Shown piece by piece: positions 22,601 through 36,586 of a stretch of DNA of 64,000 nt. This DNA is from Sminthopsis crassicaudata (Eukaryota). Below the pieces are notes generated by a model that was given only the letters and a program-made list of their open reading frames with translations, made no database searches and was not told the origin of the DNA. A program made the position numbers and the translations under genes. The stretch lies in contig NC_133617.1 of assembly GCF_048593235.1 (NCBI RefSeq), positions 671,378,958 through 671,442,957 on the forward strand. Reading direction: 5' to 3'. Numbering within the stretch: the first letter of the stretch is position 1; every line of letters begins with the position of its first letter.

Positions 22601-25600
22601 GGGGAGCAAAGCCCGGCAAAGATCCAGGGAGGAGGAACGCCCCAGCATGGGTGGAAGGCCAGCCTCGCCAGCTCAGAGGAGGAAGCGAGGCCTGTTTGCC
22701 AGCCCCCCTTGCCTGCGTGATTCTGGAGAACTGTGGTCATTGGGGCATGTTCAGGCCCAGCCCGGCCAGGGTAATGACTCCTTCGTTCTGCCACCCTTTC
22801 TCTGCAGCAGCTCCTGAGTCCCAGTCCCCTCTGCCCACCTTTCAGACACCCCCCCACAGGTTTAGTTTTCAGGTGTTCTCAGAGCCCTGATGCCTCTGGG
22901 GGTATGCTCTGAAGCTGGGGTAGGGGCAGGCTGACATAGTGAACAATCACACCGGATCCCCAGAGTCGGCCACCTGACATTCCCACCTAGACACATCCGT
23001 TGGATGTGGAGCTGGGTGGTACTTGCTGCCATCTTCCAGTATACCACAGCTTCCTTAAAGCCCCATGGGGCCAATGGACCTGTCCTGTACATAGTGGGTG
23101 TGACCTACAAGTTCAGGGCTGAGCAAACATTCTCTGATGTCAGTCAACAGAATGAACAAGGCCTGGAAGACCTCCCTGAGTCCCAGAGAGCCCAGCATAT
23201 CCACTCCTGCCCAGAGGATGCTCCAGCCCAAGGGGCCTCTCCTGAGGGGTGTTCAGGCCCCCCCACCTCCAGGACAGCTCCAGGAGACAATCCTCTTAGA
23301 GTTCTCTCTGGGAGCTCTGCTGGCCAGCTGCCATTCGGTCTCCCCACGGCGCTCACCAGTGGAAGGTGAGAAGACTCCCAGCTCTGTCTGTGTAAGCTGA
23401 GAGGAGTCTTAGAAAGGAGGAGGCCAGCCTCACCCCAAAGTGACACCCTGAACGACAATTGCATCTCCCCTTCCTTGAGAAGTTTGAATCCCGGCTCTGG
23501 GGATTTGGGGAGTCAACAGGAGGAGATGATCAGGCCATGAATCAAAGCAAAGAAAAGCCCCGTGCCAAGGACGAGGGACTCCAGAACCAGCACCTTCCTC
23601 CTAGTATGGAGATATTTCCAGAGTCCTGTGACTCCCTGTGTGGCCCTCCCCGTCCAGAGCCTGTTTCCCCGCGAGAGGTTAGCCGCTTTATGATGCAGTC
23701 CCCAGGGTCTGGACCTCACCTCAGGGAAGTGAAGTGCTGGGCGGTACCTGGACTGCCAAGAGCTCTAATTATCACATTTCACAGGCTTTCCAGCAAACAC
23801 GATAAGGTGGGCCGGCGCCTCGCTGGCTCTAACATAGCCTAGGAGTAAAGAAGCAAAGCTTCCAGGACCTGCTCCCAGACACCTGCCACCAAAGCTCCCA
23901 CTTTCCTCTTCTATCAACCAGGGATCTGCTTCCTGGGCCCCACCCTGAAAGGATTAGGGATCCTTGAAGGCCAGGGAGCCAACACTGTACTCCAGAGGCA
24001 GACCTGGTCTAGCAAGTTTCCCGGCAAGCAGGAAGGGGCTTGAATAAGAAAGAAAACTCAATTCAAAAGATCAGAGTTCAAGACTACTTTTTGCCATTTG
24101 CCAGCTGTGTAATCATAACGAAAGGAGGCTCCAGCACTCACTAGCTGCCATGTGACTTCCTCTCTCTAAACCTCAGTTTCCTCATTTGTAGAATGGGAAT
24201 AACCCCTCACTCCCCATGGCTGCACTGAACCTTTGTAAACCTTTTAAGGTTTTGTTATGAAAAGGTCAAGTGCTGAGGGCAAAAGTGACCTGGGTAGGAA
24301 TGACTGAAAAAAAAAAAGGCAGGGGCTGTTAGAGGAGAGTCTGGCCTCCAAGGCCAGTTCGGACATCTCCTGAGACACTCCCTGCAAGGCCCTTCCTTCA
24401 CAGAGATGCCCAATGGGGAGGAAAAAGTAGGTAGACAAAGCTAATGCTACCACCTGGGCGTCCTGCCTCCCAGGCCACGTGCCTCCTCTGCACCGGGCCC
24501 AGGAAAAAGGCTGAAGTTCGGCATCCACGTGGCTCCGTTTTCCATGGGCATGTGCCCAGAAACCCAGAACTGAGAAGCTACACGATACCTCTGGAGAGGA
24601 GGAGGGGCGGACAGAAAAGGAGAGAGCGGGGGGAGGGCTACGTCCTCCCCTGCCCCTTCCCAGAAGTCCTCTGACCAGTGACTCCAAGGAAGATTCGGGG
24701 TCCCGGGTGGCCTCCCTCAGTTCTCATTCCTGGGCAGTCCTGGCTAATTCCTCTCTATTCCTCCCAAGAGCCCGAGCCTCCAACCCCTTCTGAGATCCTC
24801 CCTCCTCTCACACACCCGTACCACCAGGCAGTCACCCACCTTTACTCAGCCTCTCATGCTTGCCCAGAGGACCCCAAGACCTCAATGACCCCTCCCTCGG
24901 ACTCTCCCCAACTCCCTCCCCCAGATTCCGCACGCTGCACAGCCCTCCGCTCCTTCAAACCCCATTTCTTCAGCTGTGAGTGGGGACCCCATATGGGAGC
25001 TTATAACTGAAAGTGGGGGTGTGAAATCATGTTTATTATCAGCAAATGTTTGATTTGTAAATCTACTTTACATGCTTATATACCCCGGGGTCCCGTAAAC
25101 ATTTTTTAGGTGAAAAAGAGTCAACATTTTTTAGGTGAAAAAGAGTAGTTCGTTAAGAAGCTCTGGTCCAGACACTCCCTCCCCCAAGCCCTCTTACATC
25201 ACCTCTGAACATGCAGAGATCTGGACCCCAAACAGAGCACCCCGGCCCTGCCCTTCCCATACTGTGCCCTGTCCTCCAGAGCCCCCAACCCCCCCCCGTC
25301 CCTGTCCTCCAGAGCCCCCAAAACCCTCCCCCCCCACCCTGCCCTCGCCATACTGCGCCCTGTCCTCCAGAGCCCCCAAACCCTCCCCCTGGCCCTGTCC
25401 TCCAGAGCCCCCAACCCCCCCCCCGGCCCTGTCCTCCAGAGCCCCCAAAACCCCCCCCGGCCCTGCCCTCGCCATACTGTACCCCTGTCCTCCAGAGCCC
25501 CCGAAACCCCCCCCTGTCCCTGTCCTCCAGAGCCCCCAAACACCCCCCCGGCCCTGCCCTCGCCATACTGCACCCCTGTCCTCCAGAGCCCCCGAACCCC

Positions 25601-27367
25601 CCCCGTCCCTGTCCTCCAGAGCCCCCAAAACCCTCCCCCCCGCCCTGCCCTCGCCATACTGCGCCCTGTCCTCCAGAGCCCCCAAAACCCTCCCCCCCGG
25701 CCCTGCCCTCACCATACTGCGCCCTGTCCTCCAGAGCCCCCGAACCCCCCCCCGTCCCTGTCCTCCAGAGCCCCCAAAACCCTCCCCCCCCGCCCTGCCC
25801 TCGCCATACTGCGCCCTGTCCTCCAGAGCCCCCAAAACCCTCCCCCCCGGCCCTGCCCTCGCCATACTGCGCCCTGTCCTCCAGAGCCCCCAAACCCTCC
25901 CCCCGGCCCTGTCCTCCAGAGCCCCCAACCCCCCCCCCGGCCCTGTCCTCCAGAGCCCCCAACCCCCCCCCCGGCCCTGTCCTCCAGAGCCCCCAAAACC
26001 CCCCCCGGCCCTGCCCTCGCCATACTGTACCCCTGTCCTCCAGAGCCCCCGAAACCCCCCCTGTCCCTGTCCTCCAGAGCCCCCAAAACCCCCCCCCGGC
26101 CCTGCCCTCGCCATACTGTGGCCCTGTCCTCCAGAGCCCCCAAAACCCCCCCTGTCCCTGTCCTCCAGAGCCCCCAACCCCCCCCCCGGCCCTGTCCTCC
26201 AGAGCCCCCAAACCCCCCCCCCGGCCCTGCCCTCGCCATACTGTACCCCTGTCCTCCAGAGCCCCCGAAACCCCCCCTGTCCCTGTCCTCCAGAGCCCCC
26301 AACCCCCCCCCCGGCCCTGTCCTCCAGAGCCCCCAAAACCCCCCCCCGGCCCTGCCCTCGCCATACTGTACCCCTGTCCTCCAGAGCCCCCGAAACCCCC
26401 CCTGTCCCTGTCCTCCAGAGCCCCCAACCCCCCCCCCCCGGCCCTGTCCTCCAGAGCCCCCAAAACCCTCCCCCCCCGCCCTGCCCTCGCCATACTGCGC
26501 CCTGTCCTCCAGAGCCCCCAAAACCCTCCCCCCCGGCCCTGCCCTCGCCATACTGCGCCCTGTCCTCCAGAGCCCCCAACCCCCCCCCCCCCGGCCCTGT
26601 CCTCCAGAGCCCCCGAAACCCCCCCTGTCCCTGTCCTCCAGAGCCCCCAACCCCCCCCCCCGGCCCTGCCCTCGCCATACTGCGCCCTGTCCTCCAGAGC
26701 CCCCAAAACCCCCCCTGTCCCTGTCCTCCAGAGCCCCCAACCCCCCCCCCGGCCCTGTCCTCCAGAGCCCCCAAACCCCCCCCCCGGCCCTGCCCTCGCC
26801 ATACTGTACCCCTGTCCTCCAGAGCCCCCGAAACCCCCCCTGTCCCTGTCCTCCAGAGCCCCCAACCCCCCCCCCGGCCCTGTCCTCCAGAGCCCCCAAA
26901 CCTCCCCCCCCCCCCCGGCCCTGCTCTCACCATACTGTGGCCCTGTCCTCCAGAGCCCCCAACCCCCCCCCCCCGGCCCTGCCCTACAGAGCCCCCAAAA
27001 CCTTCCCCCCGCCCCTGTCCTCCAGAGCCCTCCAAACCCTCCTCCCGGCCCTGTCCTCCAGAGCTCCCCAAACTCCCGAAGTCCTCACCATATTGTGCCC
27101 CTCCTCAGCCCTTCGGAGCCCCCCAGTGCCTCATCCCCTCACCCCGCTCAAGCCCCCGAATTCCTCAGCCCACTCCTCATTCAGTTCCCTGCTCCTTTCG
27201 TTAAATTATGCACCCTGAGACCCCTCCCCCGCGACCCTTCCCCAAGCCCCGCCCATCATCAGCCCCGCCCCCCAGATCCCAGGCTCCGCCCCCGGACCCT
27301 CGCACTCACCCCCACCTCGGCGCTGTCCTCCCCTCCGGAGCGCGTGTCCCTTGCGGGCGCGGGGCAT
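16668..27367 (-). CDS. IFRD2: Interferon-related developmental regulator 2, 437 aa. Exons in transcript order: 27310-27367, 20807-20923, 20563-20647, 20127-20251, 19823-19980, 19157-19207, 18804-18973, 18186-18291, 17898-18035, 17179-17307, 16989-17084, 16668-16748
   Basis: 12 GT-AG exons sum to 1314 nt in one open frame: MPRARKGHALRRGGQRRGG...ALATDSNKYRAKADRRKQRS...HLYNSAAFKARTKARSRVRDKRADVL*. Matches recalled human IFRD2. Confidence 0.97.
21945..22136. mobile_element. Non-autonomous DNA transposon (hAT/MITE-like); a second diverged copy lies at about 24960-25166
   Basis: Inverted ends CTTCTTAAA...TTTAAGAAGCCCTG; internal CCCCATATGGG and GTAAACATTT...GTGAAAAAG shared with the 25-kb copy. 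Family assignment is inferred. Confidence 0.55.
25241..27100. repeat. GC-rich minisatellite (VNTR), about 1.85 kb, in IFRD2 intron 1
   Basis: Interleaved modules CCCTGTCCTCCAGAGCCCCC(A/G)A(A)n(C)n and CCGGCCCTGCCCTCGCCATACTG with variable C-runs. Confidence 0.97.
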
Positions 27368-27830
27368 GCCGGGCCGGGGAAGCGGCGCGCGGGAGCGCGG
27401 GGGCGCGGGGTCAGAGCCGGCGGGGACTCGCGTCGGAATTGGCGCTCCTGGGCGCCAGCGCCAGCGCGCGCCGCGAAAAGACAAGCAGAGGCCGGGGGCA
27501 GCACGCCACGCGCGCCACCATCTTCGCTCGACTCCCCCGGCTGGTCCCACCCCTTTCGCCGTCCCGCCCGAACCGCTAGGGCCGCTGGGACAGCGAGTCC
27601 CCCAGGATCCCCGCCCCGGAGATTCCTACAGGCCTCCGGGGAGCCCCGAACCACAAGCTCCACAGGCGTCCGCGCGAGGCTCCGCCTGTCCCGCGCAGCG
27701 GCGGGGCATGTCGGGAAGTGGAGTCCCGCCCCGGGAGAGAGGGGAGGCCTCCGGCGGCCCGCACACTAAAGGGACCACAATGCCCCGGTCCCAGCGCTGT
27801 TAACTCTTTCACTGCTGGATGACGGGAGCG
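27200..27830. promoter_or_regulatory. CpG island / IFRD2 promoter and exon 1
   Basis: Very GC- and CpG-dense; GC boxes; YY1-like AAGATGGTGGC on the - strand. Confidence 0.85.
27411..27521 (-). other. Upstream ORF of IFRD2, 36 aa: MVARVACCPRPLLVFSRRALALAPRSANSDASPRRL*
   Basis: gaagATGg context (A at -3, G at +4). Out of frame with the main ATG; stop lies 43 nt upstream of it. Inclusion in the mRNA depends on an unmapped TSS. Confidence 0.6.
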
Positions 27831-28783: not shown

Positions 28784-31700
28784 TCACTTTGCGCCAGCTC
28801 CGGGACGTTTGCAGGCAGAGCCTTTCCAGCCGGGGTAACAGAGACACCGGAAGTGGTTCCATTTGGCGGCGGCCTCCCCGACGGCTCCCAGCGTCGGCTC
28901 CCAGTGTAAGAAGACGTCATCGTTGCTGGGGTCCCGTCGCGCACAGCGCCCGCGGCCGTGACATAACTGCTGGCTGCAGACCTCGGCAGCCCTAGTCACG
29001 TTGCTTAAGTAGGGGCCCAAGATGGAGGACAGATAGCGCTGGAGAAGCCCGCACTGCTCCTGAGGATGGGAGACAAAGAAAAACCCTTCATCCCTCGGAG
29101 AAAAGGGAAGGAAGGGGACATGGGAACAGGAAGGGATAACGATAAGCTTCGGAGAGGATGTGGGAATACCGGGGCACTGATGCATTGTTAGTGGAGTTGT
29201 GAACTGATCCAGCCCTTCTGGGGAGTGATCTGGAGCCGCGCCCGCGCATACCCTCGGATCTGGCAGTCTCTGCGGGGTCTGCTTCCCGAGGGGGGAAAGG
29301 TGCAGAAGTGTTTGTGGCGGCCAGGAACTGGAGAGGAGTGGGTGCCCCCTGTTGGGGAGTGGCTGAGTACATTGTGGTATAGGCATGTTATGGAGTAGTA
29401 CTGTTCTACAAGAAGCTATGGGGGGTCTGCACACATATATTGTGGCTGAGATAGACTTTAACATGTATGGGAGTGCCTGCCATCTAGGGGAGGGAGGGAG
29501 GGGGGAGGGGAAAAGTCGGAACAGAAGGGAGTGCAAGGGACGATAATGTGAAAAATTACCCATGCATATGTACTGTCAAAAAAGTTATAATAAAAAAATT
29601 AAATTAAATTAAAGGCTGGATAAGAACTGAGGCAAAAAGAATTGATGGCCTTGTTTGATGAGATCAAGAATAAAGCCATTCCTTCCATGAACTGAGGCTA
29701 AGTGAAGTGAGCAGAAACAAGATGTTGTGATGATCAACTATGATGTAGCTGGCTCTTTTTGCCAATGTGTGACTCAAGACGATTCTATAGACTTGTGGTA
29801 GAAAGCGCCAGAGAGAAAACGATAGAGGTGGAAGGTGAATCAAATCATAGTATTCTTTTTACCTTTTGTTGATGTTTATTTGCTTGTGTGTTTTTTTTTC
29901 TTTTTCATCTTTTTTTTCCCCATTTTCATCTGATTTTTCTTGCACAACATGACAAATGTAAAAACATATTTAGAAGAATTGCACATATTTAACCTAAGTG
30001 AGATTGCTTGTTATCTTGGGGAGTGGGGAAGGAAAGAAGAGAAGAAAAATTTGGAGCACAAGAATTTGCAAAGATGAATGTTGAAAACTATCTTTGCATA
30101 TATTTGGAAAAATAAAATGCTATTTAAAAAAAAAAAAAAGCAATGGGGGCAGCGAGGTGGCGCAGTGGATAGAGCACCAGCCCCTAAATCAGGAGGACCT
30201 GAGTTCAAATCTGGTCTCAGACACAACACTTCCTAGCTGTGTGACCCTGGGCAAGTCACTTAATCCCAACTGCCTCAACAACAACAACAAAAAAGAAATG
30301 ATCAGCAGGATGATTTCAGAAAGGCCTGGAAAGACTTACATGAACTGATTTTAAGTGAAGTGAACAGAACCAAGAATGAACTACATACAGCAACAACAAG
30401 ATTATGATCAATTGTGATAGACTTGGCTCTTTCAACAGTAAGGTGATTCAGGCCAGTTCCAATAGTCTTGTGATGGAGAGAGCCATCTGCACCAGAGAGA
30501 GAGATTATGGGTACCAAATGTGAATCACAACGTAGTATTTTCACTTGTTTCTTTGCTTGTTTTTTTCTTCTCATTTTTTCCCCTTTTGATCTGATTTTTC
30601 TTATGCAGCAAGATAAATATGGAAATATGTTTAGAAGTTTAAATATGTTTGCACATGTTTAAACTATATTGGATGATTTGCTGCCTAGGGAAGGGGGTGG
30701 GGAGAGGAAGGGAGAAAACATTTGGAACACAAGGTTTTGCAAGAGTGAATGTTGAAAACTATCTTAGCATATATTTTGAAAAAAAAAAAAAAAGAAGAAA
30801 AGGGAGACATCATCCCAAACAGAATTGAGTCTCTGGATGCTTGGTCCTAGGACCAACTTGGCCTTCTTCTTTTAAACCCTTCATTCATGATCAGATAATA
30901 CTCCTTCCTAGTCTTACAATGGGAGGAAACAATAAAACATCAATTATTGGAATGAATCTTAAAGTGATCACCTAATTCAATTGTTGTGTTAATATAGAAC
31001 AGGAGAAAATCAGGGATTATAAAGGGAAGTGCATTAGCCAGTGTTACCCAGTTATTAGTAGGAGACCTAGATTTCCTCAGGAGTATGGTACAGAAAAAAG
31101 AGAATGGGCTTTGGAATTAAAGACCAAGTTAAAATTCCAGTTCTCCCACTCAGAACCTCAGTAACATTCAGCAGTCACCACTTTCAGACTTTCACTTCCT
31201 TAGCTATAAATTGAAGGAATTAACCTAGAGGGCTTCAAACAAAAATTGCTTCCAGCTCTAAATCTAAGCTTCCACTGATACTGCGAGAAAGAAGCCGAAC
31301 CAAGAGCACATTGTACACGGTAACTGCAACAGAACATGGTACACAGTAACAGAACATGGTACATGGTAACTGCAACAGAACATGGTACACAGTAACAGAA
31401 CATGGTACACGGTAACTGCAACAGAACATGGTACACAGGAACAGAACATGGTACACGGTAACTGCAACAGAACATGGTACACAGTAATAGTAACAGAACA
31501 TGGTACACAGTAACAGTAACAGAACATGGTACACAGTAACAGTAACAGAACATGGTACACAGTAATAGTAACAGAACATGGTACACAGTAACAGAACATG
31601 GTACATGGTAACAGTAACAGAACATGGTACACAGTAACAGAACATGATACACGGTAACAGGAACAGAACATGGTACACAGTAACTGCAACAGAACATGGT

Positions 31701-34700
31701 ACACAGTAACAGAACATGGTACACGGTAACAGAGCATGGTACATGGTAACTGCAACAGAACATGGTACACAGTAACAGGAACAGAACATGGTACACAGTA
31801 ACAGAACATGGTACACGGTAACTGCAACAGAACATGGTACACAGTAATAGTAACAGAACATGGTATACGGTAACAGTAACAGAACATGGTACACAGTAAT
31901 AGTAACAGAACATGGTACACGGTAACAGTAACAGAACATGGTACACAGTAACAGAACATGATACACGGTAACTGCAACAGAACATGGTACACGGTAACAG
32001 AACATGGTACATGGTAACTGCAACAGAACATGGTACACAGTAACAGGAACAGAACATGGTACACAGTAACAGAACATGGTACACAGTAACAGTAACAGAA
32101 CATGGTACACGGTAACTGCAACAGAACATGGTACACAGTAATAGTAACAGAACATGGTACACAGTAACAGAACATGGTACACAGTAACAGTAACAGAACA
32201 TGGTACACGGTAACAGTAACAGAACATGGTACACAGTAATAGTAACAGAACATGGTACACGGTAACAGTAACAGAACATGATACACGGTAACTGCAACAG
32301 AACATGGTACACGGTAACTGCAACAGAATATGGTACACGGTAACTGCAACAGAACATGGTACACAGTAACAGAACATGGTACACAGTAACAGGAACAGAA
32401 CATGGTACGCAGTAACAGAACATGGTACACAGTAACAACATGGTACACAGTAACAGAACATGGTACACAGTAACAGAACATGGTACATGGTAACTGCAAC
32501 AGAACATGGTACACAGTAACAGAACATGGTACACGGTAACTGCAACAGAACATGGTACACAGGAACAGAACATGGTACACGGTAACTGCAACAGAACATG
32601 GTACACAGTAACAGTAACAGAACATGGTACACAGTAATAGTAACAGAACATGGTACACAGTAACAGAACATGGTACATGGTAACAGTAACAGAACATGGT
32701 ACACAGTAACAGAACATGATACACGGTAACAGGAACAGAACATGGTACACAGTAACTGCAACAGAACATGGTACACAGTAACAGAACATGGTACACGGTA
32801 ACAGAGCATGGTACATGGTAACTGCAACAGAACATGGTACACAGTAACAGGAACAGAACATGGTACACAGTAACAGAACATGGTACACGGTAACTGCAAC
32901 AGAACATGGTACACAGTAATAGTAACAGAACATGGTATACGGTAACAGTAACAGAACATGGTACACAGTAATAGTAACAGAACATGGTACACGGTAACAG
33001 TAACAGAACATGGTACACAGTAATAGAACATGATACACGGTAACAGGAACAGAACATGGTACACAGTAACTACAACAGAACATGGTACACGGTAACTGCA
33101 ACAGAACATGGTACACGGTAACAGAACATGGTACATGGTAACTGCAACAGAACATGGTACACAGTAACAGGAACAGAACATGGTACACAGTAACAGAACA
33201 TGGTACACAGTAACAGTAACAGAACATGGTACACGGTAACTGCAACAGAACATGGTACACAGTAATAGTAACAGAACATGGTATACGGTAACAGTAACAG
33301 AACATGGTACACGGTAACAGTAACAGAACATGGTACACAGTAATAGTAACAGAACATGGTACACGGTAACAGTAACAGAACATGATACACGGTAACTGCA
33401 ACAGAACATGGTACACGGTAACTGCAACAGAATATGGTACACGGTAACTGCAACAGAACATGGTACACAGTAACAGAACATGGTACACAGTAACAGGAAC
33501 AGAACATGGTACGCAGTAACAGAACATGGTACACAGTAACAACATGGTACACAGTAACAGAACATGGTACACGGTAACTGCAACAGAACGTGGTACACAG
33601 TAACAGGAACAGAACATGGCACACAGTAACAGAACATGGTACACAGTAACAGTAACAGAACATGGTACACAGTAACAGAACATGGTACACAGTAACAGAA
33701 CACGGTACACAGTAACAGAACATGGTACACAGTAACAGGAACAGAACATGGCACACAGTAACAGAACATGGTACACAGTAACAGAACATGGTACACAGTA
33801 ACAGGAACAGAACATGGTACACAGGAACAGAACATGGTATACAGTAACAGTAACAGAACATGGTACACAGTAACAGGAACAGAACATGGTACACAGGAAC
33901 AGTAACAGAACATGGTACACAGGAACAGTAACAGAACATGGTACACGGCAACTGCAACAGAACATGGTACACAGTAACAATAACAGAACATGGTACACAG
34001 TAACAGAACATGGTACACGGTAACTGCAACAGAACATGGTACACAGTAACAGGAACAGAACATGGTACACAGTAACAGTAACAGAACATGGTACACAGGA
34101 ACAGAACATGGTACACAGGAACAGTAACAGAACATGGTACACGGTAACTGCAACAGAACATGGTACACAGTAACAATAACAGAACATGGTACACAGTAAC
34201 AGAACATGGTACACGGTAACTGCAACAGAACGTGGTACACAGTAACAGGAACAGAACATGGCACACAGTAACAGAACATGGTACACAGTAACAGTAACAG
34301 AACATGGTACACAGTAACAGAACATGGTACACAGTAACAGAACACGGTACACAGTAACAGAACATGGTACACAGTAACAGGAACAGAACATGGCACACAG
34401 TAACAGAACATGGTACACAGTAACAGAACATGGTACACAGTAACAGGAACAGAACATGGTACACAGGAACAGAACATGGTATACAGTAACAGTAACAGAA
34501 CATGGTACACAGTAACAGGAACAGAACATGGTACACAGGAACAGTAACAGAACATGGTACACAGGAACAGTAACAGAACATGGTACACGGCAACTGCAAC
34601 AGAACATGGTACACAGTAACAATAACAGAACATGGTACACAGTAACAGAACATGGTACACGGTAACTGCAACAGAACATGGTACACAGTAACAGGAACAG

Positions 34701-36586
34701 AACATGGTACACAGTAACAGTAACAGAACATGGTACACAGGAACAGAACATGGTACACAGGAACAGTAACAGAACATGGTACACGGTAACTGCAACAGAA
34801 CATGGTACACAGTAACAATAACAGAACATGGTACACAGTAACAGAACATGGTACACGGTAACTGCAACAGAACATGGTACACAGTAACAGAACATGGTAC
34901 ACAGTAACAGGAACAGAACATGGTACACAGTAACTACAACAGAACATGGTACACAGTAACAGGAACAGAACATGGTACACAGGAACAGAACATGGTACAC
35001 AGTAACAGGAACAGAACATGGTACACAGTAACACTGTATGGTGATCAACTATGATAGACTTAGTTCTTCTCAGCAATAGTAACAGTAACAGCATGTGATG
35101 ATCAACTATGGTAGACTCAGCATACTATTTGCAGTTTAAAATTTTTTTTTTCCTTCATATATTTTTTCCCCTTTGTTCCAATTCTTCTTTCACAACATGA
35201 CTAATGTGGAAATGTTTAATACGATTATACATGTATAGGCTAAATCGGATTGCTTATTTTCCTGGGGAAGGGGGAAAGAAGGAAGAAAAATGTGATCTCA
35301 AAATCTTATTTTAAAAAATGAGTACTGAAAACTACCTTTATATGTGATTGGAAAAAAATATATATTATTTAAATGAATACATCTAGAGTCCTAGATCTGG
35401 CCTTTGAGACGAGGGCACTAAGAATAGAAATGGAAATTCTGAGAGGATACAGAGAAGAAGCACTTACCCCAGAACTGGAAAAAGAGAGGTTACCCCAGAG
35501 GACGATGCCTTCTGCCCCCAGGGCTACACTTACTCCAATGGTCTGAACCAGGTCATTCTGGGAAGGGAGAGATGTTACTTAGCCACCCTTATCTCTTGGT
35601 CAAACCCCTTGCTCCCCCTCTCCCACTTCCTCCTCAGACCAGGGGCTCCAAAAGCTCCCTGAAGATTGGGACTATGTCCTCCCCTCAGATCAAAAGCTCA
35701 CCTGGGACAGAAACCGCCCAGAACCAAGGTGAGTGAGTCGGGTATAGGCCAGCACTGGCAGAGCACGTGGATGTGCAAACCGGGCCACTCGGAAAGCCTC
35801 TTCCAGCCGATATCTTGCATAGGCCTTTCGATAGACTACAGGCAAGTCTGGTGGGAGGTAGATGCTGGGGAAGAGAGCACTAGAGGCTTCCCAAAGCCAG
35901 CGCAGCTGGTCATTGTAGGTCTTGTCTGCCTTCTGGCACTTCCCGGTGTAATTGTGCCTGCTGGGCCATGGGCTTCGGCAGAGAGGGAATCGATAGAAGC
36001 CCCACAGCCCCCCGGGACGAAGTGCCTGCCCCAGTCTCAGGGTATCCTCCATCAGTGCCCGAGCAGCCCCCTCAAAAGCAGCCCGAGCTTCTAGACGCTG
36101 CTGCTTAGGAGACAGATCCGGCCACTGCTGCTGGGCCCAGGCCCGAGATGCCTTTCGATAGATCCTGCGACGCCCCCAGTTCCAGTTCCAGAGTGGGTGC
36201 CACTCTTCCCAGTCAAGCACAGCTAAGCCTCTGAAGCCCTTATGCATGAGGCCTGAAATCTGGCTGGCAACCAGGGTGAGGTGCTTCTTCAGGGGAACAG
36301 CCTGGGGGACACCTCCATGGTGGATGACCCCTGTTGGCCCTAAGTAGGGGTAAAGGCCAAACTGGTTCTTGTAGAAGATGGTAACGTTCTGGCCCCGGAA
36401 ATGCTGGCCCTGGTTGTACACGATGCCAAAGGCCTCCAAGGGCAGGGGCTGGCCAAAGCGGGTTTGGCATCGGGCTGTGGGCACGTTCCACACTGCAGTG
36501 AAGGGGCGGCCCAGCTGCCACGAGGTGGCCCACCCCCCCACTAGGCATAAGGTGGCCCAAGCCACCAGAGAGCAGCCCCCATTCAT
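28784..36586 (-). CDS. HYAL3: Hyaluronidase-3 (GH56), 416 aa. Coding exons 35702-36586, 35468-35557, 28784-29059
   Basis: Signal peptide [18 protein letters not shown]; [10 protein letters not shown]; [16 protein letters not shown]; catalytic LDWEEW; 90-nt middle exon; EGF-like [12 protein letters not shown]...FRCLCYPGW. 1251 nt in frame; acceptor at 36610. Confidence 0.96.
29130..29610 (+). mobile_element. L1 fragment (ORF2 end plus 3' UTR); 5' part strongly GC-enriched
   Basis: Aligns by eye to L1 copies at about 59340-59460 (+) and 63170-63430 (-); its 3' end matches the L1 tail at 54150-54380. Confidence 0.8.
29620..30800 (+). mobile_element. Stacked L1 3'-end fragments with an inserted CORE-SINE (about 30145-30295)
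   Basis: GATGATCAACT...GACTTGGCTCT, AATGTTGAAAACTATC motifs and A-tails; SINE A/B boxes. Confidence 0.8.
31304..35032. repeat. Tandem satellite, about 3.7 kb, core ACAGAACATGGTACACAGTA (20-mer) with 6-nt insert variants, in HYAL3 intron 3
   Basis: Directly visible; roughly 150-170 units; embedded in an L1 3' fragment that resumes at about 35033-35370. Confidence 0.98.

What the first reader, a model, noticed from the sequence alone, without database searches (positions are those of the whole stretch)
27368..27530. Apparently conserved strong-Kozak uORF controlling the ribosome-inactivation factor IFRD2
Seen: a 36-codon uORF (gaagATGg...cTGAcc) ending 43 nt before the main ATG. Recalled: the annotated long human IFRD2 N-terminal extension contains EDGGARGV and LTPRP. 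The same peptides appear here in the frame offset by one from the uORF, exactly over its ATG (GAT-G) and TGA (CTG-A). That implies a human uORF of about 34 codons with homologous start and stop. Here the extension frame is not in frame with the main CDS, so the conserved element would be the uORF rather than the extension. Established: IFRD1 mRNA is stress-regulated via a uORF, and IFRD2 binds and inactivates idle 80S ribosomes. Inference: a translational feedback switch on a ribosome-hibernation factor.
Basis: partly seen in the sequence, partly recalled or inferred. Interest (0 to 1): 0.7.

Follow-up and report, generated by a model that had tools for sequence, protein, structure and literature searches.

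The report
Deeply conserved uORF before IFRD2
The small reading frame in front of the ribosome-silencing gene IFRD2 is real and keeps its start, stop and size from a lizard to marsupials and placental mammals, so it most likely throttles how much IFRD2 is made, though that effect is untested.

Summary
On the minus strand an ATG at 27521 opens 36 codons, stops at 27413-27411, and lies 43 nt before the IFRD2 start at 27367.

The window is marsupial. I fetched IFRD2 leaders from nine other lineages: brushtail possum, zebu, squirrel monkey, and spliced mRNA contigs of a carnivore, a rodent, a shrew, a bat, one further placental and a gecko-like squamate.

- All ten carry the same ATG inside an invariant GAAGATGGTG.
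- The frame is 31-36 codons with exactly one in-frame stop, 18-47 nt before the main ATG.
- The start matches the TISU/YY1 motif SAASATGGCGGC at 10-11 of 12 positions.
- Start and stop neighbourhoods are conserved (0.95 and 0.89), but the spacer is not (0.37).
- Codon positions vary evenly, so the peptide itself is not constrained.
- The primate-annotated N-terminal extension is not in frame here or in most species.

A 2025 preprint already lists a ribosome-profiling-selected human "uORF_IFRD2"; one of its guides equals window:27502-27521:-.

The layout parallels the proven IFRD1 uORF. Repression, stress resistance and feedback remain untested, and so does the TSS in this species. This is a new member of a known kind, of moderate interest. 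The scan had not noted it before.

The parts
27514..27525 (-). TISU/YY1-like start element GAAGATGGTGGC around the uATG
   Evidence: It matches SAASATGGCGGC at 11 of 12 positions. The consensus is quoted from PMC5577775. The ten letters GAAGATGGTG are invariant in all 10 aligned species.
27411..27521 (-). uORF: ATG 27521-27519, 36 sense codons, TGA 27413-27411
   Evidence: Translation and ATG inventory. Orthologous uORFs of 31-36 codons occur in 9 other lineages. It holds the only in-frame stop between the uATG and the main ATG in every species.
27401..27418 (-). Conserved stop neighbourhood (TGA followed by CCCCGCGCCC)
   Evidence: It is nearly invariant in all nine mammals. Mean pairwise identity among the placentals is 0.89, against 0.37 for the spacer just downstream.
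27368..27410 (-). 43-nt spacer between the uORF stop and the main ATG
   Evidence: Spacer length varies from 18 to 47 nt across species and not by multiples of three. Sequence is poorly conserved among placentals.
27310..27367 (-). IFRD2 coding part of exon 1 (MPRARKG...), with the donor GT at 27309-27308
   Evidence: It matches residues 1-30 of the IFRD2 chains in PDB entries 11jj, 11kh and 6mtc. The same start occurs in marsupial, monotreme, reptile and lungfish proteins.
27526..27620 (-). Probable 5' end of the leader and core promoter (GC boxes); TSS not determined
   Evidence: This stretch is 84% identical to brushtail possum, against 59% for intron 1. In placental mRNA contigs the assembled 5' ends lie 8-58 nt upstream of the uATG. 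There is no RNA evidence for this species.

Best explanation
This is a cis-acting regulatory uORF in the IFRD2 leader that has been kept throughout amniotes. Ribosomes loading at the cap meet, within a few tens of nucleotides, an AUG set in a TISU-like context (GAAGAUGGUGGC). They translate 31-36 codons and terminate 18-47 nt before the IFRD2 AUG. A uORF this long followed by so short a spacer should allow little reinitiation. IFRD2 synthesis would then depend on the minority of ribosomes that leak past the uAUG or reinitiate, or on transcripts that start downstream of it, so the uORF sets a low and tunable ceiling on IFRD2 output. What is selected is the act of translating the frame (start, stop, length), not its peptide. 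The same DNA letters probably also serve as a YY1-type promoter-proximal element. The layout copies the paralogue IFRD1: one cap-proximal uORF ending about 43 nt before the main AUG. A reasonable inference is that it works like IFRD1, giving basal repression and relative resistance when eIF2 is limiting. Shown: anatomy, conservation, presence in spliced mRNAs of other species, and the listing of the human uORF among ribosome-profiling-selected uORFs. Inferred: repression, stress behaviour and any feedback with idle ribosomes.
For: Anatomy is. The same uATG, in a gaagATGg context, opens 31-36 codons with a stop before the main ATG in possum, zebu and squirrel monkey genomes. It does the same in spliced mRNA contigs of a carnivore, a rodent, a shrew, a bat, another placental and a squamate. 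GAAGATGGTG is invariant in the alignment. Length changes inside the uORF are whole codons (33, 34 and 35 among placentals), while spacer lengths differ freely. Each species has exactly one stop in the uORF frame, against 3 stops in the 20 other frame-sequences. The joint chance of a 28-40-codon closed frame in three deeply diverged lineages is about 6e-4. Among placentals, identity is 0.95 at the start element, 0.75 in the body, 0.89 at the stop, 0.37 in the spacer and 0.81 in CDS exon 1. The marsupial pair is 0.95 identical in the uORF and 0.59 in intron 1. The TISU match is 10-11 of 12. Elfakess and Dikstein predicted that TISU AUGs which are not the main start act as strong translation inhibitors, and a TISU-headed conserved uORF is documented for USP12/JPX. 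The human uORF_IFRD2 appears in a ribosome-profiling-selected set.
Against: GC boxes lie only 20-50 nt upstream of the uATG, so part of the transcripts may start downstream of it. Assembled contig ends are not TSSs. No reporter or ribosome-profiling data for IFRD2 were seen directly. In the one screen table I read, uORF_IFRD2 was not a clear hit (FDR about 0.14). The start element alone could be conserved for YY1 binding. A strong-context uAUG does not fit the weak-context bypass model described for DDIT3. A lungfish leader lacks the element. The leader is not unusually structured (z = +1.0).
Confidence: 0.75

Rival explanations
1. The conservation is at DNA level only. The ATG is kept because it lies inside a YY1/TISU-type promoter-proximal transcription element in a CpG-island promoter, and the open frame behind it is a by-product of GC-rich sequence.
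For: The start matches the TISU/YY1 consensus at 11 of 12 positions, and TISU is a YY1 site that regulates transcription. GC boxes lie next to it. Codon positions vary evenly at 13, 18 and 17 of 32 sites. GC-rich leaders hold few stops.
Against: A promoter element does not explain several findings. The in-frame stop is conserved. Indels inside the frame are whole codons. The only stop in the leader falls in the uORF frame in 7 of 10 species, and a stop is present in that frame in 10 of 10. The stop neighbourhood is conserved (0.89) while the spacer after it is not (0.37). The one mismatch to the motif (T for C at +5) is itself invariant. The human uORF was picked from ribosome-profiling data.
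Confidence: 0.1
2. The region encodes an N-terminal extension of IFRD2, as annotated in primates, and is not a uORF.
For: Catarrhine and platyrrhine predicted proteins carry a 64-70-aa extension that holds EDGGARGV and LTPRP. In squirrel monkey an in-frame ATG at -207 is open through to the main ATG.
Against: In this window the extension frame is out of frame with the main ORF and has no ATG. The uATG lies in phase 0, 1 or 2 relative to the main ATG in different species, so no single extension frame is conserved. Of the fetched orthologues, 98 start exactly at MPRARKG, as do all three IFRD2 chains in the PDB. The extension-frame ORF found no relatives by word search or in the PDB. The monkey extension ATG has C at -3.
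Confidence: 0.02
3. The uORF encodes a functional micropeptide.
For: The placental peptides share MVAR at the start, a central SQL and a PPGP end. The paralogue IFRD1's uORF is treated as a conserved microprotein in the literature.
Against: Third codon positions show no excess of change (13/18/17). Marsupial, placental and squamate peptides share only the first few residues. The shared residues coincide with the conserved start and stop nucleotide motifs.
Confidence: 0.05
4. In this marsupial the transcripts start downstream of 27521, so the frame is not in the mRNA and has no translational role here.
For: No RNA evidence could be obtained for this species. GC-box-like sequences lie 40-100 nt upstream of the uATG.
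Against: The uORF is 95% identical between two marsupials, against 59% in intron 1. Spliced mRNAs of six other amniote lineages contain it.
Confidence: 0.05

Closest known systems
IFRD1 uORF (Zhao et al. 2010; Andreev et al. 2015, PMC4383229)
   Same: It is in the paralogous gene. It is a single AUG uORF close to the cap (19 nt in IFRD1) that ends 43 nt before the main AUG. Here the spacer is 43 nt, and the uATG lies 8-58 nt from assembled 5' ends in orthologues. In IFRD1 the uORF represses about eightfold and gives resistance to eIF2 inhibition.
   Different: The IFRD1 uORF is longer, at 51-53 codons. It has a suboptimal +4 U context rather than a TISU-like one. By eye it shows no sequence similarity to this uORF. 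Its effect is proven by mutagenesis, whereas none is shown for IFRD2.
TISU-headed conserved uORFs (USP12/USPL/JPX, PMC5577775) and the TISU element (PMC2518114, PMC3177215)
   Same: An 11-of-12 match to SAASATGGCGGC surrounds a cap-proximal AUG that opens an upstream frame rather than the main ORF. In JPX, mutating that AUG raised downstream translation. The TISU authors predicted strong inhibition for such cases.
   Different: The +5 position is T, not C, in every species. The distance to the TSS is unknown here. YY1 binding and scanning-free initiation are untested. The USP12 uORF overlaps the main start, whereas this one ends before it.
Human uORF_IFRD2 in the CRISPR screen of 978 ribosome-profiling uORFs (bioRxiv 10.1101/2025.07.07.663426)
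   Same: It is the orthologous element. Guide sgRNA_1445 has the same 20 letters as window:27502-27521:-.
   Different: It is only a table entry. The text does not discuss it, describe its conservation or mention a TISU link. In the one gene-level table I read it was not a clear hit.
ATF4/GCN4 delayed reinitiation and the DDIT3 single-uORF bypass
   Same: All are uORF-based control of a stress-linked gene.
   Different: Here there is one uORF, not two. The spacer is short, so delayed reinitiation would miss the main AUG. The start context is strong, unlike the weak DDIT3 context.
Primate-annotated long IFRD2 isoform (505 aa in apes and Old World monkeys)
   Same: It covers the same nucleotides, read one base earlier.
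   Different: It needs an upstream in-frame ATG and a spacer length that only primates have. It is absent in this window.

Membership tests
AUG-initiated non-overlapping regulatory uORF | An ATG upstream of the main start with an in-frame stop before the main ATG | tested here: met
   ATG 27521, TGA 27413-27411, main ATG 27367.
AUG-initiated non-overlapping regulatory uORF | It lies inside the mature mRNA (TSS upstream of the uATG) | tested here: inconclusive
In orthologues, spliced mRNA contigs of six lineages contain the uATG 8-58 nt (mammals) and 60 or 164 nt (squamate) from their 5' ends.
AUG-initiated non-overlapping regulatory uORF | Start, stop and frame conserved beyond neutral expectation | tested here: met
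AUG-initiated non-overlapping regulatory uORF | Ribosome occupancy and an effect on main-ORF output | not testable with these tools
   The only evidence is indirect. The human orthologue is in a ribosome-profiling-selected list. No reporter data exist.
TISU element | Sequence SAASATGGCGGC around an AUG | tested here: met
   The match is 11 of 12 here and 10-11 of 12 in all ten species. The window holds only 2 such sites in 64 kb. The mismatch is T for C at +5.
TISU element | Position within about 5-30 nt of the TSS | tested here: inconclusive
   Contig 5' ends lie 8-58 nt upstream in placentals. These are lower bounds, not TSSs, and there are no data for this species.
TISU element | YY1 binding and scanning-free initiation | not testable with these tools
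   No tool here tests this.
IFRD1-type single-uORF leader resistant to eIF2 inhibition | A single cap-proximal uORF longer than 20 codons that ends a few tens of nt before the main AUG | tested here: met
   There is only one ATG between -340 and the main ATG. The uORF has 36 codons and a 43-nt spacer.
IFRD1-type single-uORF leader resistant to eIF2 inhibition | Main-ORF translation maintained under eIF2alpha phosphorylation and lost when the uAUG is mutated | not testable with these tools
   IFRD2 is absent from the Andreev et al. text and from its held supplements.
N-terminal extension proteoform | An upstream in-frame start with an open frame through to the main ATG | tested here: not met
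   The extension frame is out of frame in the window and has no ATG. The feature is met only in the primate locus.
Micropeptide-coding uORF | Amino-acid-level constraint (third-position excess, conserved peptide) | tested here: not met
   Variable sites are 13, 18 and 17 of 32 by codon position. The peptides diverge between clades.

The most novel reading that the evidence does not exclude
The two vertebrate IFRD paralogues keep the same leader design: one cap-proximal uORF that ends about 43 nt before the start. In IFRD2 the uORF is headed by a TISU element. The design would work as a sensor of initiation capacity. When ribosome loading or ternary complex falls, fewer ribosomes are captured or queued at the uORF, and relatively more IFRD protein is made to park idle 80S ribosomes. 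That would be a translational feedback loop on ribosome hibernation, at least as old as amniotes for IFRD2 and possibly older than the IFRD1/IFRD2 duplication.
Probability: 0.15. Interest if true: 0.75.

Novelty: new member of a known kind. Interest (0 to 1): 0.5.

Why it matters
IFRD2 plugs the P and E sites and the mRNA channel of idle 80S ribosomes, and how its supply is set is not known. This uORF is a compact element whose start motif is invariant across about 300 million years and which copies the proven control layout of IFRD1. It is a direct, cheap target for reporter and base-editing tests of whether a ribosome-hibernation factor is itself under translational control. It also argues that the long primate 'isoform' in current annotation overlaps a conserved uORF and should be treated with caution. 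Finally, it adds a clear case to the small set of TISU-headed uORFs.

Tried and rejected
- **RNA reads:** There is therefore no RNA or TSS evidence for this species.
- **Extension-frame ORF (134 aa):** the word search found no relatives, and the PDB search gave only chance hits.
- **Bacterial promoter/terminator scan:** irrelevant for this gene.
- **Leader folding:** not more stable than shuffles, z = +1.0.
- **Papers:** none discusses an IFRD2 uORF. IFRD2 is absent from the held supplements of Sandmann et al., the Ribo-seq ORF roadmap preprint and Andreev et al., though some files were cut when stored.
- **Locus look-ups:** bilby and platypus proteins were not on record, so there are no monotreme data.
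- **Lungfish mRNA leader:** it lacks the element, so I do not claim an age beyond amniotes.
- **Homology between the IFRD1 and IFRD2 uORF peptides:** not tested. It would have needed typing a human peptide. By eye only a short RSQL string is shared, at different positions.

Full report
**What is there.** The gene lies on the minus strand. Exon 1 of IFRD2 starts at 27367 with MPRARKG and ends at 27310, before a GTGAGT donor. It matches residues 1-30 of the IFRD2 chains in PDB entries 11jj, 11kh and 6mtc, all of which begin at this methionine.

Exons 2 onward lie at about 16.9-20.9 kb, after a 6.4-kb intron that holds a large GC-rich minisatellite. HYAL3 and NAA80 lie upstream on the same strand.

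Upstream of the main ATG there is one ATG within 340 nt, at 27521, in the context gcgaagATGg. It opens 36 codons and stops at TGA 27413-27411, 43 nt before the main ATG. That includes the point that EDGGARGV and LTPRP are read one base earlier, over the ATG and the TGA, in a frame that is not the main frame.

**Chance.** By composition alone the frame is unremarkable. Dinucleotide shuffles of a 193-333-nt leader give a closed uORF of at least 36 codons in 3-22% of trials. The leader is not unusually structured. The question is therefore one of conservation.

**Which genome.** One exon (window:18803-18973:-) was used for the single large protein search. A representative from that search then seeded two word searches. 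The window's exons are closest to Tasmanian devil, brushtail possum and bilby IFRD2, so the window is marsupial. The comparison with primates therefore spans the marsupial-placental split.

**Orthologous leaders.** I fetched three genomic loci: brushtail possum (L001), zebu (L002) and squirrel monkey (L003). I also fetched spliced mRNA contigs from public RNA assemblies:

- a carnivore (L004)
- a rodent (L005)
- a shrew (L006-L011)
- a vespertilionid bat (L014)
- one further placental (L015/L016)
- a gecko-like squamate (L012/L013)
- a lungfish (L017)

None is human, and no human contig was fetched or compared.

Every amniote sequence has the same upstream ATG in a gaagATGg context, an open frame of 31-36 codons, and a TGA 18-47 nt before the main ATG. 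In the alignment the ten letters GAAGATGGTG are invariant in all ten species, and about 21 of the first 25 letters are shared between the squamate and mammals.

The mRNA contigs translate to full-length IFRD2 without interruption, so they are spliced. In the mammals they carry the uATG 8-58 nt from their 5' ends. The uATG is therefore inside mature mRNA in six lineages.

The lungfish leader is AT-richer with nine uATGs and has no such element, although a 36-40-codon uORF ends 85 nt before its start. I claim conservation across amniotes and no further.

**Is it the frame that is kept?** Five results say yes.

- Lengths inside the uORF differ only by whole codons (33, 34 and 35 among placentals; 36 in marsupials; 31 in the squamate). 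The spacer after the stop takes lengths of 18, 27, 28, 30, 39, 41, 43 and 47 nt.
- Each of the ten leaders has exactly one stop in the uORF frame between the uATG and the main ATG. The other two frames together hold three stops in twenty frame-sequences, and in seven species the uORF terminator is the only stop in the leader.
- Given the composition, a closed frame of 28-40 codons behind a fixed ATG has probability 0.06-0.11 per lineage. That gives about 6e-4 jointly for the three deeply diverged lineages.
- Among placentals, mean pairwise identity is 0.95 at the start element, 0.75 in the body, 0.89 around the stop, 0.37 in the spacer and 0.81 in the first 60 coding bases.
- Between the two marsupials the uORF is 0.95 identical, against 0.59 for intron 1.

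**Is it the peptide?** No. Variable sites fall 13, 18 and 17 of 32 on codon positions 1, 2 and 3. Marsupial, placental and squamate peptides share little beyond the first residues. This is the signature of a uORF selected for being translated, not for its product.

**Extension versus uORF.** Apes, Old World and New World monkeys have predicted proteins with a 64-70-aa extension. In squirrel monkey DNA an in-frame ATG at -207 (C at -3) precedes the uATG at -149, and the uORF is 33 codons.

Outside primates the phase of the uATG relative to the main ATG is 0, 1 or 2 depending on species, so no extension frame is conserved. In this window the extension frame has no ATG and is out of frame. Of the fetched orthologues, 98 begin exactly at MPRARKG. 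The conserved object is the uORF.

**Human.** I did not fetch human DNA. A 2025 preprint (10.1101/2025.07.07.663426) screened 978 uORFs chosen from ribosome-profiling data by start peak, triplet phasing and drop after the stop. Its guide table lists four guides for 'uORF_IFRD2'. One of them, sgRNA_1445, has the same 20 letters as window:27502-27521:- (compared by eye).

For the stop it fails by proxy through the monkey locus and the ape extension peptides. IFRD2 is not discussed in that text. In the one gene-level table I read it was not a clear hit (p about 0.016, FDR about 0.14).

I found no paper that describes the IFRD2 uORF, its conservation or its motif. Brown et al. 2018 only state that 'IFRD proteins' escape eIF2alpha repression via a uORF, and they cite IFRD1 work.

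**The start motif.** The 'strong Kozak' site is more specific than that. GAAGATGGTGGC matches the TISU consensus SAASATGGCGGC at 11 of 12 positions, and at 10-11 of 12 in all ten species. Only two such sites occur in the 64-kb window.

TISU is a YY1-type element found up to +30 from the TSS. It drives accurate initiation on very short leaders. Its discoverers noted that where its AUG is not the main start it is out of frame or followed by a stop, and should act as a strong inhibitor. USP12/USPL/JPX is a documented conserved example.

This has two consequences. It gives a mechanism by which a cap-proximal uAUG can still be used efficiently. It also raises the rival that the ATG is kept for transcription. 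The conserved stop and frame argue against that rival as the whole story.

**How it probably works.** The layout parallels IFRD1. [quoted passage not shown] Loss of its AUG raises expression eightfold and abolishes resistance to eIF2 inhibition.

By analogy, and from the general rule that long uORFs with short spacers allow little reinitiation (established knowledge), the IFRD2 uORF should repress basal IFRD2 synthesis and could shape its response to initiation stress. This is inference. The feedback idea is not excluded and not supported.

**Limits.**

I worked beside those places and sent none of their letters to any search tool afterwards.
- Contig ends are not TSSs.
- Monotremes, birds and amphibians were not sampled.
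- No functional data exist for IFRD2.

**Verdict.** It is a new, deeply conserved member of a known kind (regulatory, TISU-headed uORF) whose human copy is already catalogued but uncharacterised.

Noticed in passing
window 25240-27077: IFRD2 intron 1 holds a GC-rich minisatellite of about 1.8 kb, with units near 34, 58, 91 and 125 nt and strong C skew on the + strand. It creates long spurious ORFs on both strands. A similar GGTCTGGAGGAC-type repeat starts in possum intron 1 (L001 from about 2790).
   Followed up: partly
window 31301-35033: A 3.7-kb tandem array of a 26-nt unit (about 156 copies, strong A excess on the + strand) lies between HYAL3 exons.
   Followed up: no
window 27626-27709 (minus strand): A second upstream ATG at 27709 opens 27 codons, next to a GC box and an ETS-like CACTTCC. 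The homologous ATG in possum (L001 about 2144) is in frame with the main ORF and open through to it. It probably lies in the promoter, upstream of the TSS.
   Followed up: partly
L002-L006, L014-L016 (uORF ends): All seven placental uORFs end in Pro-Pro-Gly-Pro-stop. This type of ending is known elsewhere to slow termination. Marsupials and the squamate end differently.
   Followed up: no
L003 2501-2710: The squirrel monkey annotation starts the IFRD2 CDS at an ATG with C at -3, 58 nt upstream of the conserved uATG. The rodent mRNA contig L005 begins just 3' of the homologous position, so this ATG may lie at or before the TSS.
   Followed up: partly
L017 1-423: The lungfish IFRD2 mRNA contig has a 423-nt AT-richer leader with nine uATGs and a 36-40-codon uORF that ends 85 nt before the start. 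It has no TISU-like motif.
   Followed up: no
window 27771-27792 (minus strand): A 22-nt inverted repeat containing CATTGTGG is conserved in possum (L001 about 2062-2082). It may be a ZNF143-type promoter site (from memory, not tested).
   Followed up: no
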